A stretch of 63,389 nucleotides of DNA, filler included, from Octopus bimaculoides (taxonomy: Eukaryota): the NCBI RefSeq assembly GCF_001194135.2. It is 4 parts of 4 records of this genome, joined end to end, with 100 filler letters (N's around TTAATTAATTAA, not from the genome) between each part and the next. Parts side by side here need not be neighbours in the genome. Positions count along the whole stretch, not along the records: positions 48,016 to 55,492 come from NC_068983.1; 3 more parts are not named here. One strand, written 5' to 3'. Numbering within the stretch: position 1 is the first letter of the stretch; every line of letters starts with the position of its first letter. This document shows positions 48,508 through 54,947 of the stretch, in pieces. Below the pieces are notes generated by a model, which was not told where the DNA came from, did no database searches, and worked only from the letters and a program-made list of their open reading frames with translations. The position numbers were made by a program, and so were the translations under genes.

Positions 48508-48618
48508 TTGATCCGTGTAGTAGCAACCCGTGTGATAATGGAGGTATATGTTTAAACCGAGGACGTAATTTCTCATGTGAATGCAAACCTGGTTTCAGGG
48601 GACATAACTGTTCAATAA
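48508..48618 (+). CDS. EGF-repeat gene, EGF exon 1 ([37 protein letters not shown])
   Basis: tttccAG acceptor and GTAAG donor; 111 bp, phase 1-1; six Cys spaced C-x4-C-x5-C-x8-C-x-C-x8-C. Confidence 0.94.
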
Positions 48619-48667
48619 GTAAGATAAAGATTTTACTCGTACTTCACACTTGCCTTACATTTCTTTG

Positions 48668-48721
<54 letters not shown>

Positions 48722-48759
48722 TGTATGTGTGCGGGTGCGTGCTTGTGTGTGTGTAGGTG

Positions 48760-48894
48760 TAGGGTTGGTTGTGTAAGAGGTTTGCTTCCCAACCACATGG
48801 TTCCGGTTTGATTCCTGCAGCGTGCTACTTTAGGAAAGTGCATTTTCAGTGGATTTGGTAAACGAAATCTGTGTTGACTCCCGTTCGTGTATAC

Positions 48895-48943
<49 letters not shown>

Positions 48944-49140
48944 TTGTTTTTGTGTTTGTATTTGCTCCTCTCCCACTGGTGCTGTTTACCTACGTCAGTG
49001 TAAATTAACGGTTCGGCGAAAGAAACTGATACAAGTATCAGACGTAAAATATAAATCCTGTGGTCAATTTCTTTGACTAAACCCTTCGAGATGGTGTCCA
49101 GTATGGCCTTATTCTACCGACTAAAACTAATAAAAATATA
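48760..49140 (+). mobile_element. SINE family B (head, (TG)n, tail) in intron 1 of the EGF array
   Basis: GCTTCCCAACCACATGGTTCCGG head and GCGGTTCGGC-type tail. Confidence 0.75.
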
Positions 49141-49394
49141 AACGTTAGAAAGGTTATGATTACTGCATCTTACTTGTTACGGAGGTTTTACTAATATTTA
49201 TTATTAAGCCTTTATACATTTCAAAGATTGATATCATGTTTGACAGTAATTCTGTTTCTCGTTACCTATAGATTGTTCAGGTAATGATCAAGAAAAAATA
49301 CCTATTTTATTGAATGAGACTATGCTACTCCTGGGGTAATGTAAATTGAAGAAATTGAAAAGTTGGTGGAGATCAAAATAGTATAAACACTCGG

Positions 49395-49600
49395 GAAAAT
49401 TTTTCTTAAAGATTCAAGGTGTAAAATTCGGGGGAAGAGGGAAACTCCATTACATCGACTCCTGTGCTTGACTCGTACTTAATATACTCATCACCCGAAA
49501 GGATGAAAGTTAAAGGTAACCTCGGATAACTCAAGAAACTAGAAGAAATACCACTAAGTATTTTGTCCGGTGTGCTAAGTGTTAAGCCAGATCGCCGCCA
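49395..49600 (-). mobile_element. SINE family A in intron 1 of the EGF array
   Basis: CCCGAAAGGATGAAAGTTAAAGGTAACCTCGG core. Confidence 0.72.
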
Positions 49601-49762
49601 TTTTGAAAAATATATAACTCCTGTGTTAAAGAAAAATAAAATAAAGAAATAGAAAGGTTAACCAAATAAAATAATATATTAAACAAGGCATTGTTTATAT
49701 ATATGTACATTAGCAAGATTGCTGTATAAGAGAATAAAATTCTTATTAATATTGCCTTACAG

Positions 49763-49873
49763 TTGATCCATGCAGTAGTACTCCATGTCAGAATGGAGGA
49801 GAATGCACAAACGTCGGGTCTACGTTTGTGTGTGACTGTGCAGTTGGTTACACACTTAGTAACTGCTCTGAAT
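49763..49873 (+). CDS. EGF exon 2 (DPCSSTPCQNGGECTNVGSTFVCDCAVGYTLSNCSE)
   Basis: ccttacAG / GTAAGT; 111 bp, phase 1-1; EGF Cys spacing. Confidence 0.94.
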
Positions 49874-49933
49874 GTAAGTATAACATATTCTTTCTGTTCA
49901 AGATACAAAGAGAAATTAACGCCAGTACTGGTG

Positions 49934-50016
<83 letters not shown>

Positions 50017-50601
50017 CTCACTCACTTTCTATTTTTTGTCTCTTACTCTAAATTTCTAAACTTCCGGTAAATCTTGTTCCTATTCAATTAATGAAGAGAT
50101 GGATATTATTAGGTAGAGCTGGTTGAGGGAATTTAACTTTCGGTAAATAGTTTATAAGATTTGAGTTCGAGCCTACAACTAGCGAATCAAATCGGTATAT
50201 GTGTAAGAAATACACGTGACTCGGCACTCATTTCAGTCTGCAATCATCACTGGATAACATCCAGTATACAGGGCGATTATATATAAACCGTTTAATGCCG
50301 TAAGAATAGAGGTATGTATCTCCCCACAAGAGCCATAATGGAATAATGATGACAAGGAGACATATATATATAGTGATATTTCTGGTATTAATGTAGTATC
50401 TTCAATTGGCAAGTTAATATATTAACATTTATTAGCATTAACATATTATCTTCATTAAGGTTTACTAATCATTCAAGATATTTTTCATATAAGTTTAAAA
50501 TATACACTGCAATACAGTATATCTATGAATACACTATCATTTTCGCACCAACTTCTCATAAACGACATATTCCTAAAATACTCTGTTTTTTCCATGCTTA
50601 G

Positions 50602-51876: not shown

Positions 51877-52811
51877 GTGAGTATACGATTACTTACTGTA
51901 TGTTGCGGTAGTGCTATTTCAAAAGTCGTCTATATCCACAACATACGTTCATAAATATATGCATACATACATGCAGGCGTCATATACATATACATATGCG
52001 TGTATACGTGAAGGCAAGTGTAGCTATATTCATGTGCACACCACATAATTGCATGCATGATTCAAGCATACGTGAACAAGCATACATATATAGTGTATAT
52101 ATACATACATATACGAACACAAACACAAATACGCACACACACACATTATACATATATATATATATACATATGTGTGTGCGTGTGTGCGCGCGTATGTATG
52201 TATATATATATATATNNNNNNNNNNNNNNNNNNNNNNNNNNNNNNNNNNNNNNNNNNNNNNNNNNNNNNNNNNNNNNNNNNNNNNNNNNNNNNNNNNNNN
52301 NNNNNNNNNNNNNNNNNNNNNNNNNNNNNNNNNNNNNNNNNNNNNNNNNNNNNNNNNNNNNNNNNNNNNNNNNNNNNNNNNNNNNNNNNNNNNNNNNNNN
52401 NNNNNNNNNNNNNNNNNNNNNNNNNNNNNNNNNNNNNNNNNNNNNNNNNNNNNNNNNNNNNNNNNNNNNNNNNNNNNNNNNNNNNNNNNNNNNNNNNNNN
52501 NNNNNNNNNNNNNNNNNNNNNNNNNNNNNNNNNNNNNNNNNNNNNNNNNNNNNNNNNNNNNNNNNNNNNNNNNNNNNNTATATATATATGTATGTATATA
52601 TATGTATGCACGTATTATGTACGTATGCATGTATGTATGTGTGTGTATATGTATGTATGTATGTATATATGTACGTACGTAAATGTTTAAGTTAACCAAT
52701 AAAATTGTATATACGTTTGGAGCCATAAAACTAGTGTTGTATTTAACTGTAGTGAAATATTTAACTGTAGTGAAATATTTAACTGACAATTTCTCCTTTT
52801 ATATTAACTAG

Positions 52812-52922
52812 TCGACCCTTGTAGTAGTAACCCGTGTCAAAATGGTGGCATTTGCTCAAACCATGGAGAAAATTATACTTGCGAATGTTTACAAGGATAC
52901 AAAGGAAATGATTGTTCAGTCG
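52812..52922 (+). CDS. EGF exon 6 ([36 protein letters not shown])
   Basis: attaactAG / GTAAGA; 111 bp, phase 1-1; EGF Cys spacing. Confidence 0.94.
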
Positions 52923-53274
52923 GTAAGAAAAATCGCATATCTATTTATGTGGAGTATTATTTCCAAATTCGTTTCGTCCACTATCACTAAAATTCAACAC
53001 TCACCGTTAACACACGCGTATAAGCACATGTACATTCCAATACACGTGCATGTATACTGATACACTAAAGATAGGCAAGGCTTTTCTCAAGATTGAGATG
53101 TAAATTTCCTTTTGTTGTTTACATTTCAAGTGGAACCTTTTATCTTTGTTAGCAACCAGCTCCTTCTTTACAGGAAAACTTTAAATAATTAAAAAACACA
53201 AGAGTTCACAAACGCGCGCACAAGCATGCATGCATACATACAAACAATACATACAGAGATCTATCATTTAAATA

Positions 53275-53480
53275 TATATGAACATGTCTAGACATGCAAC
53301 TATATGCATGAGAATACATACATAAAACAAAACATACAAATCTCTACATATACATACGTACATACAAAAATACCCTGGTGATGTTATTGAAATTCCAATT
53401 AAAGAGCGATGGATCTTGGCTAGAAACCGACTCTTTCACTATTGGCAAGACATTTTGAAATAAAACTGAATAATGAAATA
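53275..53480 (+). mobile_element. 3' UTR-only copy of the RLE element, followed by (TACA)n
   Basis: Colinear with 28680-28879. Confidence 0.7.
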
Positions 53481-53599
53481 CATACATACATACATACATA
53501 CATACATTTATGCACCATTAATCAGAAATATAATATTTGTTTGTGTGTATGATTAGTTATACATGAATACATGTCCATAATGTCTTTTTTGCTTTCCAG

Positions 53600-53710
53600 T
53601 TGCTCCATGTGACAAGAATCCGTGTTTGAATAACGGCATATGTAAAAACAACGCAACGAATTTCATATGTGACTGTCAAATTGGATATAGCGGAGAGACC
53701 TGTTCTGATG
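53600..53710 (+). CDS. EGF exon 7 (APCDKNPCLNNGICKNNATNFICDCQIGYSGETCSD)
   Basis: ttttgctttccAG / GTACTG; 111 bp, phase 1-1; EGF Cys spacing. Confidence 0.93.
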
Positions 53711-53772
53711 GTACTGTTTTTAAATTCTATTATGTAATATTCAATATATAATTGTATTTTAACCTGAATGTA

Positions 53773-53991
53773 TTGGGTTGTCCGGAAAGTTCGTGCCGAT
53801 TTATAGTAGCTTACTTTTCGACTTGAAACTACCTCAATTCTGGGAAGAGGGTATTTTCAAGTTAAAAGAAAGATGGAGACGCATTGTACAACAAAATGGT
53901 TCATATTTGGTTGATTTAAAATGTAATAGCAAGTATTTATTGACCTTTTTCTTTCCTTTAAAATTCGGCACGAACTTACCGGACAACCCAA
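53773..53991 (+). mobile_element. 219-bp mariner-derived MITE in intron 7 of the EGF array
   Basis: About 30-bp TIRs TTGGGTTGTCCGG(A/T)AAGTTCGTGCCGA, TA on both sides, retains transposase tail LPQFWEEGIFKLKERWRRIVQQNGSYLVD*. Confidence 0.9.
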
Positions 53992-53994
53992 TAT

Positions 53995-54330
53995 TTATGG
54001 TTGGGTGGTTATGAAGCAAGCCTTGCAGTCACGTGGTTTTGGGTTCAGTCATACTGCAGTAGCTCTGTGTTGACCAATACCCTGTAAAAGAATTTGGTAG
54101 ACAGAATGAGTATGGAAATCCATCGTGTATATATTTATATCTATCTACCTACCTGTCTATATTTGTGTATACGTGTCCCGTCACCGTTTCTCAACTTGCG
54201 TTGGTTTGTTTATGTTCCGTAACATAGCGGTTCGGCAAAAGAAAACGATAGGATAAGGACTAGACTCAGACTAAACCTTTCAATACTGTATCCCATTATA
54301 GCCGCTATCCAATGGCTGAACAACTAAAAG
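53995..54330 (+). mobile_element. SINE family B in intron 7
   Basis: GGGTTCAGTC head and CATAGCGGTTCGGCAAAAGA tail. Confidence 0.7.
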
Positions 54331-54670
54331 GTAGGAGATAACAGTATGCTGAATGTAGCTGGTACTTACCGAAAATAAATATTTTTAGTGCCTTCATTTG
54401 CTAAATTCGTCACACAATGCATTTTCGTATATAGAAATTTTTACTTCTGCATCTGTCTGCTATGTGTGTTTAAGGAAAGATTATTATAAGAACTTTATTG
54501 TTTTTGCGAAATCAGCCCGTACAAGGCAGACAAAATAATCAAGGTCTTTCAAGATGTGACCACCTTCATTTTACTCTCGGTACTGTGTATTTAATAATAT
54601 ATGCCACAATATACCCTTCCCCTTTTCGAGACCGTAGATTGTGTTTGTGAGAGATTCGGGTGCTGTATAA

Positions 54671-54725
<55 letters not shown>

Positions 54726-54836
54726 CAAATAAGAACAATTGTATCTAGTCACTAAAGATGTAATAAACTCTTTCTTTATCATCATATTTGAATTTTATAT
54801 GTATGTATATATATAAACGTTTATGTAATATTTTAG

Positions 54837-54947
54837 TTATCCCCTGTGATAGAGAGCCGTGTCAAAATGATGGAGATTGTACAAACGAAGGAGCGGATTA
54901 CAGATGTAAATGTAAAGAGGGCTTCAAAGGAAAGGATTGTGAAATTG
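54837..54947 (+). CDS. EGF exon 8 (IPCDREPCQNDGDCTNEGADYRCKCKEGFKGKDCEI)
   Basis: atattttAG / GTGAAT; 111 bp, phase 1-1; EGF Cys spacing. Confidence 0.93.

What the first reader, a model, noticed from the sequence alone, without database searches (positions are those of the whole stretch)
48508..54947. Array of eight identical-length, frame-symmetric single-EGF exons
Seen: eight exons of exactly 111 bp, all phase 1-1, each encoding one EGF module with the same Cys spacing (4-5-8-1-8). Introns are 1144, 728, 802, 140, 935, 677 and 1126 bp, and the spliced frame stays open for about 296 aa. Exons 1, 4, 5 and 6 are visibly the most alike: exons 4 and 5 share the first 18 nt including the acceptor, and exons 1 and 4 share TCAATAA/GTAAG. 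None of these exons is recovered intact by the ORF track. Known: phase 1-1 EGF modules are the classic exon-shuffling unit. Inference: lineage-specific tandem exon duplication built an extracellular rod-like EGF protein. Any subset of exons can be skipped in frame, so combinatorial length isoforms are possible.
Basis: partly seen in the sequence, partly recalled or inferred. Interest (0 to 1): 0.8.

Follow-up and report, generated by a model that had tools for sequence, protein, structure and literature searches.

The report
Eight single-EGF exons, octopod gene
This is a real but ordinary stretch of an octopus-type gene in which eight equal-sized exons each encode one EGF module, an old and textbook kind of exon-duplication array also found in a related argonaut gene.

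Summary
Eight + strand exons of exactly 111 bp have AG/GT borders and phase 1-1. Each encodes one EGF module with spacing C-x4-C-x5-C-x8-C-x-C-x8-C, and the spliced frame is open for 295 aa (Pfam EGF E=2.7e-61; 0 such patterns in 300 shuffles). The N gap lies wholly inside intron 5, between matching TA/TATG microsatellite flanks. It breaks no exon and cannot shift the frame, but it could hide another exon, so eight is a minimum.

The exons are old paralogues: nt identity is 45-72%, synonymous sites are saturated (pS 0.75, pN 0.32), and introns do not align. They are about as far from each other as from the closest relative, an Argonauta hians gene. That gene has the same design, with 21 exons of 111 bp in phase 1-1, placed between a VWA domain and a VWD-C8 module. 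Recent tandem duplication of a two-exon unit is visible in Argonauta but not here.

In-frame skipping is possible for any class 1-1 module array and has precedents such as CD97. It could not be tested.

No specific orthology to Notch, Delta or Crumbs was found (45% identity or less). Verdict: a new member of a known kind, of low interest.

The parts
48508..48618 (+). EGF exon 1 (111 bp, phase 1-1): [36 protein letters not shown]
   Evidence: acceptor ttttccag, donor gtaaga
49763..49873 (+). EGF exon 2 (111 bp, phase 1-1)
   Evidence: donor gtaagt
50602..50712 (+). EGF exon 3 (111 bp, phase 1-1); the only module lacking the Asx-hydroxylation consensus
51515..51625 (+). EGF exon 4 (111 bp, phase 1-1); weakest polypyrimidine tract (Y=0.44)
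51626..51765 (+). Intron 4, only 140 nt. It is similar in size to the 123-145-nt introns inside the Argonauta two-exon units but does not align with them.
51766..51876 (+). EGF exon 5 (111 bp, phase 1-1); the only module with an O-fucose consensus (C2-x4-T-C3)
51877..52811 (+). Intron 5, containing the assembly gap 52216-52578. The gap is flanked on both sides by (TA)n/(TATG)n microsatellite.
52812..52922 (+). EGF exon 6 (111 bp, phase 1-1); closest to the first EGF exon of the Argonauta gene (67% nt and aa)
53600..53710 (+). EGF exon 7 (111 bp, phase 1-1); weak donor ATG/gtactg; EOGT-type consensus C5-xxGxSGxx-C6; no O-glucose site
54837..54947 (+). EGF exon 8 (111 bp, phase 1-1); donor gtgaat; no O-glucose site. 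The gene continues beyond the piece, since the frame ends open in phase 1.

Best explanation
The piece is an internal segment of a protein-coding gene in an octopod-type genome. It encodes at least eight consecutive EGF-like modules of the non-calcium-binding type, one module per 111-bp class 1-1 exon.

Origin (inferred): the array arose by tandem duplication of a single module exon through unequal recombination in the flanking phase-1 introns. This happened long ago. The copies have since diverged to saturation at silent sites while keeping all six cysteines, the exact length, the splice sites and the glycosylation or hydroxylation consensus motifs, which indicates purifying selection.

Product (inferred): the default expectation is constitutive splicing into one open frame, giving a 37-residue-period EGF stalk or spacer in a secreted or extracellular-matrix protein.

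Family (shown): the gene belongs to the same EGF subfamily as an Argonauta hians gene. That gene has a VWA domain, 21 exons of the same design, and then a VWD-C8 module that can be joined in phase.

Not shown: whether the window's gene has the same VWA and VWD ends. The piece stops 492 nt before exon 1 and 545 nt after exon 8.
For: Exon anatomy and open frame. EGF identity: Pfam EGF E=2.7e-61 and hEGF 8e-36. Best solved relatives are the EGF tandems of Delta-like 1 and Notch1. Chance is excluded: 8 patterns against 0 in 300 shuffles. Old duplication under constraint: nt identity 45-72%, mean pS 0.75, mean pN 0.32, differences concentrated at codon position 3 (0.56 against 0.31 and 0.35), and all 48 Cys intact. 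Intron flanks do not align. Closest relative: P0009 from Argonauta hians, 56% identity over 151 aa, against 45% or less for every other protein retrieved. Its locus has 21 exons of exactly 111 bp, AG/GT-bounded, with the same Cys spacing. A VWA domain lies upstream. A phase-1 acceptor leads into VWD (E=1.2e-12 and 1.5e-8) and C8 (1.6e-4) downstream. Octopod genome: the intronic repeats match an Octopus sinensis contig at 70-85%. Extracellular features: O-glucose consensus in 6 of 8 modules, Asx-hydroxylation consensus in 7 of 8, and 6 N-glycosylation sequons. Class 1-1 modules and their tendency to duplicate in tandem by intronic recombination are established (PMC3927616).
Against: No transcript or near-identical protein was found for the window's own gene. 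The best database identity is 56%, so expression and the real splice pattern are unverified. The protein search listed only hits of 512 aa or less, so a long annotated model may have been missed. Neither a signal peptide nor terminal domains are visible in the piece. The exon-level tree does not give one-to-one orthology with the Argonauta exons, so the two loci could be paralogous rather than orthologous. The exon 7 donor (gtactg) and the exon 4 acceptor tract are weak, which leaves room for regulated inclusion. The assembly gap may hide further exons.
Confidence: 0.75

Rival explanations
1. One reading: a recent, lineage-specific exon expansion whose symmetric exons act as cassettes, giving combinatorial length isoforms.
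For: All exons are phase 1-1, so any subset can be skipped in frame. The exon 7 donor and the exon 4 polypyrimidine tract are weak. Alternative use of EGF exons is documented elsewhere: CD97/ADGRE5 has isoforms with 3, 4 or 5 EGF repeats (PMC9101421), and matrilins show splice heterogeneity (PMC4294422). A truly recent two-exon-unit expansion does exist in the Argonauta relative, with 93-99% exon identity and alignable introns.
Against: In the window the copies are anciently diverged, with saturated pS and unalignable introns. They are no closer to each other than to the Argonauta exons. Phase symmetry is a general property of module arrays, most of which are spliced constitutively. No transcript evidence of any kind was available.
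Confidence: 0.1
2. The array is part of a canonical conserved EGF-repeat gene (Notch, Delta/Jagged, Crumbs, Eys, SNED1 or a fibropellin-like gene), and only looks orphan because the piece is short.
For: Top database names include 'neurogenic locus notch', 'fibropellin-1-like' and 'crumbs'. The best solved structures are DLL1 and Notch1 EGF tandems. The O-glucose consensus, frequent in Notch EGFs, is present in 6 of 8 modules.
Against: Identities to all of these are generic (29-46%), with no repeat-level correspondence. The only clearly closer relative is the octopod VWA-EGF-VWD gene. There are eight consecutive modules of identical length and loop spacing, and none has the cbEGF N-terminal motif. 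To my knowledge this is unlike the mixed cb/non-cb, variable-length repeats of Notch, Crumbs or fibropellin.
Confidence: 0.08
3. A decaying or unexpressed exon array, that is, a pseudogene fragment or a dead duplicate of a multi-EGF gene.
For: No identical or near-identical predicted protein or transcript-derived protein was found in the 5.8-billion-sequence collection. The introns are loaded with SINE and mariner-type insertions.
Against: All eight frames are open, all 48 cysteines and all 16 splice dinucleotides are intact, the length is invariant, and pN is well below pS. This is unlikely after the long divergence implied by saturated silent sites, unless selection maintained the exons. Transposon-rich introns are normal in octopod genomes, and the O. 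sinensis locus shows the same.
Confidence: 0.05

Closest known systems
Argonauta hians gene at BAAFZT010000052.1 about 40.81-40.85 Mb (partial model P0009, auto-named 'adhesive plaque matrix protein 2-like')
   Same: The exon design is identical: 111 bp, AG/GT, phase 1-1, one EGF per exon, Cys spacing 4-5-8-1-8, module start x-D-P-C-S-S-x-P-C and module end C-S/A-I. It has the highest sequence similarity of anything retrieved: 56% over 151 aa, with single modules up to 67%.
   Different: Argonauta has 21 exons arranged as alternating A/B two-exon units that are 93-99% identical, with alignable introns, so the expansion there is recent. The window has 8 or more mutually diverged exons with no alternation. 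There is no one-to-one exon orthology and no intron or repeat similarity. The VWA and VWD-C8 flanks are seen only in Argonauta.
Octopus sinensis 'matrilin-2' model (P0121) and vertebrate matrilins
   Same: P0121 has EGF modules with the same 4-5-8-1-8 spacing next to a VWA domain that is 43% identical to the Argonauta one. Matrilins are VWA-(EGF)n-VWA-coiled-coil matrix adaptors with variable EGF number and splice heterogeneity (PMC4294422).
   Different: The O. sinensis contig ends right after the VWA exon, and the model runs into a mariner fragment, so no array is visible there. In Argonauta the array is followed by VWD-C8, not by a second VWA and a coiled coil. So 'matrilin' is an automated name, not a demonstrated membership.
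Class 1-1 EGF module arrays in general (for example fibrillins, LDL-receptor family, coagulation factors, sea-urchin fibropellins)
   Same: One EGF module per symmetric phase-1 exon, multiplied by tandem duplication through intronic recombination (PMC3927616). I recall, without checking here, that sea-urchin fibropellin (uEGF) genes also have one repeat per exon and isoforms differing in repeat number.
   Different: Those families mostly use 38-45-residue calcium-binding EGFs with variable loop lengths. Here all modules are 37 residues, non-cb type and of invariant length.
Notch / Delta-like EGF tandems
   Same: hEGF-type fold, frequent C1-x-S-x-P-C2 O-glucose consensus, and the best matches among solved structures (DLL1 4xbm E=8e-43; Notch1 9b3n E=3.5e-32).
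   Different: Only generic identity (about 35-45%), no cbEGF modules and no repeat-level correspondence. No DSL, LNR or ANK context could be examined.
CD97/ADGRE5 and other EGF-TM7 receptors
   Same: They are a precedent for in-frame alternative inclusion of whole EGF exons, giving 3-, 4- or 5-EGF isoforms with different binding properties (PMC9101421).
   Different: This is a functional analogy only. There is no sequence-specific relationship, and no evidence that the window's exons are alternatively used.

Membership tests
EGF-like domain (Pfam PF00008 / hEGF PF12661) | Six cysteines in the EGF pattern, scoring above the curated Pfam thresholds | tested here: met
   EGF 203.7 bits (cut-off 21.5) with 8 stretches; hEGF 121.7 bits (cut-off 29.3); 8 of 8 modules are C-x4-C-x5-C-x8-C-x-C-x8-C.
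Class 1-1 (symmetric phase-1) exon module | The module is encoded by one exon flanked by phase-1 introns on both sides | tested here: met
   each exon is 111 bp, AG/GT-bounded, with a codon split 1+2 at every junction. Only one spliced frame is open.
Calcium-binding EGF (cbEGF, PF07645) | N-terminal D/N-x-D/N-E/Q motif before Cys1 | tested here: not met
   0 of 8 modules (sequence is I-I-D-P-C and similar). EGF_CA has no stretch passing on its own.
Calcium-binding EGF (cbEGF, PF07645) | Asx beta-hydroxylation consensus C-x-D/N-x4-F/Y-x-C-x-C | tested here: met
   7 of 8 modules, and 21 of 21 in Argonauta. On its own this does not make a module calcium-binding.
Octopod VWA-EGFn-VWD gene (Argonauta P0009 locus) | 111-bp phase 1-1 EGF exons with 4-5-8-1-8 spacing and a DPCSSxPC start | tested here: met
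   same design; 56% identity, the best of all proteins retrieved.
Octopod VWA-EGFn-VWD gene (Argonauta P0009 locus) | VWA domain upstream and VWD-C8 downstream of the array in the same transcript | not testable with these tools
   The piece ends 492 nt before exon 1 and 545 nt after exon 8. No eukaryotic genome collection was available to extend it.
Matrilin | VWA-(EGF)n-VWA followed by a C-terminal coiled-coil oligomerisation domain (PMC4294422) | tested here: inconclusive
   This cannot be seen in the window. In the closest relative the array is followed by VWD-C8, not by VWA and a coiled coil. The O. sinensis 'matrilin-2' model is truncated.
Notch / Crumbs / Eys orthologue | Repeat-by-repeat orthology of EGF modules with the conserved gene | tested here: not met
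   only generic 29-46% identity. No outside module beats the within-array or Argonauta matches, except marginally for exons 7 and 8.
Notch / Crumbs / Eys orthologue | Family-specific non-EGF domains (LNR/ANK, laminin G) and synteny | not testable with these tools
   The piece is too short and no flanking sequence is available.
Alternatively spliced EGF cassette array | Transcripts that differ by inclusion of individual EGF exons | not testable with these tools
   No RNA-seq or cDNA resource for the source species was available. No near-identical transcript-derived protein was found.

The most novel reading that the evidence does not exclude
The array could belong to an octopod-specific family of VWA-EGFn-VWD extracellular proteins whose EGF exon number evolves fast. 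The window has 8 or more old, diverged exons, while Argonauta has 21 recently homogenised or amplified ones. In that family, individual symmetric exons, for example exon 7 with its weak gtactg donor, could be regulated cassettes that tune the length of the stalk.
Probability: 0.1. Interest if true: 0.35.

Novelty: new member of a known kind. Interest (0 to 1): 0.12.

Why it matters
It matters little beyond annotation. The piece is a clean example of a class 1-1 EGF module array, a mechanism known since the 1980s. It does show that automated gene models in octopod genomes fragment or truncate such genes: the Argonauta array is split into a partial VWA+4-EGF model and several 74-aa models, and the O. 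sinensis model runs into a transposon. The contrast between an old, diverged array here and a freshly amplified two-exon unit in Argonauta could serve as a small case study of copy-number dynamics in module arrays. Only if long-read transcripts showed regulated exon choice would it become moderately interesting.

Tried and rejected
1. I looked for the window's own protein or a close orthologue. The search for homologous proteins with the spliced 295-aa peptide gave only generic multi-EGF hits at 29-46% identity. All listed hits were 512 aa or shorter, so long models may be invisible to that tool.

Run instead with the Argonauta VWA part, it was swamped by multi-VWA giants. None of them carries EGFs closer than 53% to the window exons.

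3. I hypothesised that window exons 4 and 5, with their 140-nt intron, correspond to the Argonauta A-B unit with its 123-145-nt intron. This is not supported. Exons 4 and 5 are equally distant from the A and B types, and the intron aligns only at the splice signals.

4. I looked for the window's exons on the O. sinensis 'matrilin-2' contig. They are absent; only interspersed repeats match, and that contig ends after the VWA exon.

5. tRNA and Rfam scans found no tRNA. All 'miRNA' hits are below the gathering score and lie on microsatellites, so they are artefacts.

6. ORFs on both strands of the piece show nothing coding apart from the exons and a mariner remnant.

7. I checked for a link between the Argonauta gene and the argonaut eggcase proteome. 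The preprint does not mention such a protein.

8. The viral, bacterial, plasmid, phage and E. coli collections were not searched, because they cannot contain this locus.

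
Full report
OBSERVATION

I read the whole piece 48016-55492 and scanned all six frames for EGF cysteine patterns. Exactly eight matches to C-x4-C-x5-C-x8-C-x-C-x8-C occur, all on the + strand. The only other loose matches are translations of (TG)n microsatellites.

Extending each match to the nearest splice signals gives eight exons of exactly 111 bp: 48508-48618, 49763-49873, 50602-50712, 51515-51625, 51766-51876, 52812-52922, 53600-53710 and 54837-54947. 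Each is preceded by AG and followed by GT. The introns are 1144, 728, 802, 140, 935, 677 and 1126 bp. At every junction the last base of one exon and the first two of the next form a codon, so all exons are phase 1-1. Only one frame of the 888-nt spliced sequence is open, and it yields 295 full codons.

Pfam scores the product as EGF at E=2.7e-61 with eight stretches, and as hEGF at 8e-36. In 300 shuffles of the piece the pattern never occurs. Exons 4 and 5 share the acceptor plus 16 nt, and exons 1 and 4 share TCAATAA/GTAAG. Exons 1, 4, 5 and 6 are the most alike, though only at 59-72% nt identity.

THE GAP

The N run 52216-52578 lies entirely within intron 5. It starts 339 nt after the exon 5 donor and ends 233 nt before the exon 6 acceptor. 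Both edges are the same kind of (TA)n/(TATG)n microsatellite, which is the usual reason for an assembly break.

No exon is cut, and the frame across the gap does not depend on the gap's length. Two things cannot be known from the sequence: whether the join is correct, and whether one or more further symmetric exons are hidden there. So eight is a minimum. The units are only about 60% identical to each other, so a collapse of near-identical repeats is unlikely. The gene also clearly continues beyond the piece on both sides. Exon 1 starts in phase 1 with no initiation codon, and exon 8 ends in phase 1 with no stop.

AGE OF THE DUPLICATION

Pairwise exon identity is 45-72% at nt level (mean 60%) and 39-69% at aa level (mean 51%). 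The proportion of synonymous differences averages 0.75, which is saturation, while non-synonymous differences average 0.32. Differences concentrate at third codon positions (0.56 against 0.31 and 0.35). Sequence next to the exons does not align beyond the splice signals, and no intron-to-intron repeats other than microsatellites and transposon copies were found.

The copies are therefore ancient. Selection has kept them intact: all 48 cysteines, all 16 splice dinucleotides and the exact length are preserved.

RELATIVES

A search of the 5.8-billion-protein collection with the spliced peptide returned 256 multi-EGF proteins at 29-46% identity. They carry assorted automated names (notch, fibropellin, crumbs, adhesive plaque matrix protein 2-like), and none is near-identical. 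All listed hits are 512 aa or shorter, so long models may be missed.

I then compared single modules of identical spacing. For exons 1-5 no outside module is closer than the nearest sister exon. The best outside modules come repeatedly from one protein, P0009 of the octopod Argonauta hians (58-67%). BLASTP gives 56% identity over 151 aa to P0009, against 45% or less for all others.

P0009 is a partial model with a VWA domain followed by four EGFs. Its genomic locus contains 21 consecutive exons of exactly 111 bp. They are AG/GT-bounded, have the same 4-5-8-1-8 spacing, and share the same D-P-C-S-S-x-P-C start. The annotation breaks the array into the partial model plus several 74-aa two-EGF models.

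After the 21st exon, which ends in phase 1, there is an acceptor (…tttatag|TA CGT CCA…) that is also phase 1. It opens an exon encoding the first half of a VWD domain (E=1.2e-12). The second half of VWD (1.5e-8) and a C8-like stretch (1.6e-4) follow on the same strand. The likely Argonauta architecture is therefore VWA-(EGF)21-VWD-C8….

The VWA part has one other relative in the word-indexed collection, Octopus sinensis 'matrilin-2' (P0121): signal peptide, two EGFs of the same spacing, and a VWA. Its 47-kb contig ends just after the VWA exon, and the model then runs into a mariner transposase fragment. No array can be seen there. That contig shares many interspersed repeats with the window's introns at 70-85% identity, whereas the Argonauta locus shares only the exons. 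The window therefore comes from an Octopus-like octopod genome.

HOW THE WINDOW RELATES TO ARGONAUTA

In Argonauta, exons 2-21 alternate between two types, A (…KYGGEC…) and B (…KHGGHC…NGSNYNC…). Within a type they are 88-99% identical, and the short A→B introns of 123-145 nt align well. This is a recent tandem amplification of a two-exon unit, introns included.

In a neighbour-joining tree these exons form their own clade, and the window exons do not pair with them one to one. Window-to-Argonauta identities (45-71%) are about the same as window-to-window identities. I tested whether window exons 4 and 5, separated by the unusually short 140-nt intron, are the counterpart of the A-B unit. Neither the exon distances nor the intron alignment supports this.

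The module type and exon design are thus shared across octopods. The window's eight copies are old, and lineage-specific expansion is demonstrable only in Argonauta. Whether the two loci are orthologous or paralogous remains open.

WHAT IT MOST LIKELY DOES

Shown: the exons encode eight tandem EGF modules with a 37-residue period.

Inferred from consensus motifs (with the consensus definitions from my own knowledge):
- None has the D/N-x-D/N-E/Q calcium-binding start, so the tandem is not expected to be the calcium-stiffened rod of fibrillin-type cbEGFs.
- Six of eight have the POGLUT1 O-glucose consensus C1-x-S-x-P-C2.
- Seven of eight have the Asx-hydroxylation consensus.
- One has an O-fucose consensus and one an EOGT-type consensus.
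- There are six N-glycosylation sequons.

These features, together with the signal-peptide, VWA and VWD contexts of the relatives, point to a secreted or matrix protein in which the array serves as a glycosylated spacer or interaction stalk. The best solved-structure matches are the EGF tandems of Delta-like 1 and Notch1, which is a fold-level resemblance only.

Splicing is presumed constitutive. The exon 7 donor (ATG/gtactg) and the exon 4 polypyrimidine tract (Y=0.44) are the weakest signals. They would be the first places to look for regulated inclusion.

COMPARISON WITH WHAT IS KNOWN

Symmetric class 1-1 modules flanked by phase-1 introns, and their multiplication by intronic recombination, are established (PMC3927616). 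In-frame alternative use of whole EGF exons is documented for CD97/ADGRE5 (PMC9101421). Matrilins, defined as VWA-(EGF)n-VWA-coiled coil, show splice heterogeneity (PMC4294422).

The window meets the tests for 'EGF domain' and 'class 1-1 module'. It fails the cbEGF N-terminal motif. It shows no repeat-level orthology to Notch, Delta or Crumbs-type proteins. It cannot be tested for matrilin or Argonauta-type terminal domains. The names 'matrilin-2' and 'adhesive plaque matrix protein 2-like' on the relatives are automated labels, and the Argonauta downstream VWD-C8 argues against a true matrilin architecture.

VERDICT

The isoform idea is untested and is generic to such arrays. This is a new, apparently unannotated or mis-annotated member of a well-known kind of gene structure. 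Interest is low.

Noticed in passing
window 53771-53993 (intron 7): A 223-bp element with 35-nt terminal inverted repeats (91% complementary), flanked by TA on both sides. Its interior translates to '…FWEEGIFKLKERWRRIVQQNGSYLVD', which aligns to the last ~30 residues of Mos1 mariner transposase (E about 0.5, not significant alone). It is probably an internally deleted mariner-type element or MITE.
   Followed up: partly
window 48029-48156, 48773-49120, 54009-54330, 49415-49612, 53254-53507, 55239-55450, 51085-51400: Interspersed repeat copies in the introns and flanks. Several carry a B-box-like GGTTC(G/A)A(G)TCC motif. They match multiple places on an Octopus sinensis contig at 70-85% identity but match nothing in the Argonauta locus. 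ARAGORN calls no tRNA in them.
   Followed up: partly
window 52095-52218, 52580-52683, 54657-54727: Rfam 'miRNA' matches (mir-3149, mir-297, mir-5014 and others) are all well below the gathering scores and lie on (TA)n/(TATG)n microsatellites. They are low-complexity artefacts, not RNA genes.
   Followed up: yes
L003 3065-18180 (= L001 13116-28231), Argonauta hians BAAFZT010000052.1: 21 consecutive 111-bp EGF exons arranged as alternating A/B two-exon units, 88-99% identical within a type and with alignable introns. This is a recent tandem amplification. The public annotation splits it into a partial VWA+4-EGF model and several 74-aa models. A VWD-C8 module follows in phase.
   Followed up: partly
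L002 10001-36463, Octopus sinensis VCDQ01000545.1 (protein P0121 'matrilin-2'): After the VWA domain the gene model ends in a mariner transposase fragment ('…LFQQDNAKPHTARK…PAYSPDVAPSDYGLF…'), and the contig ends shortly afterwards. This is probably a mis-spliced, truncated model whose real 3' part is missing; it may include an EGF array.
   Followed up: partly
window 52740-52785 (intron 5): A perfect 18-nt tandem repeat (TATTTAACTGTAGTGAAA, 2.6 copies) lies about 30 nt upstream of the exon 6 acceptor. No function is suggested.
   Followed up: no
output: All 120 listed hits of the word-indexed protein search are 512 aa or shorter, although EGF-repeat proteins are often far longer. The tool may not return long proteins, which limits negative conclusions about annotated orthologues.
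   Followed up: no
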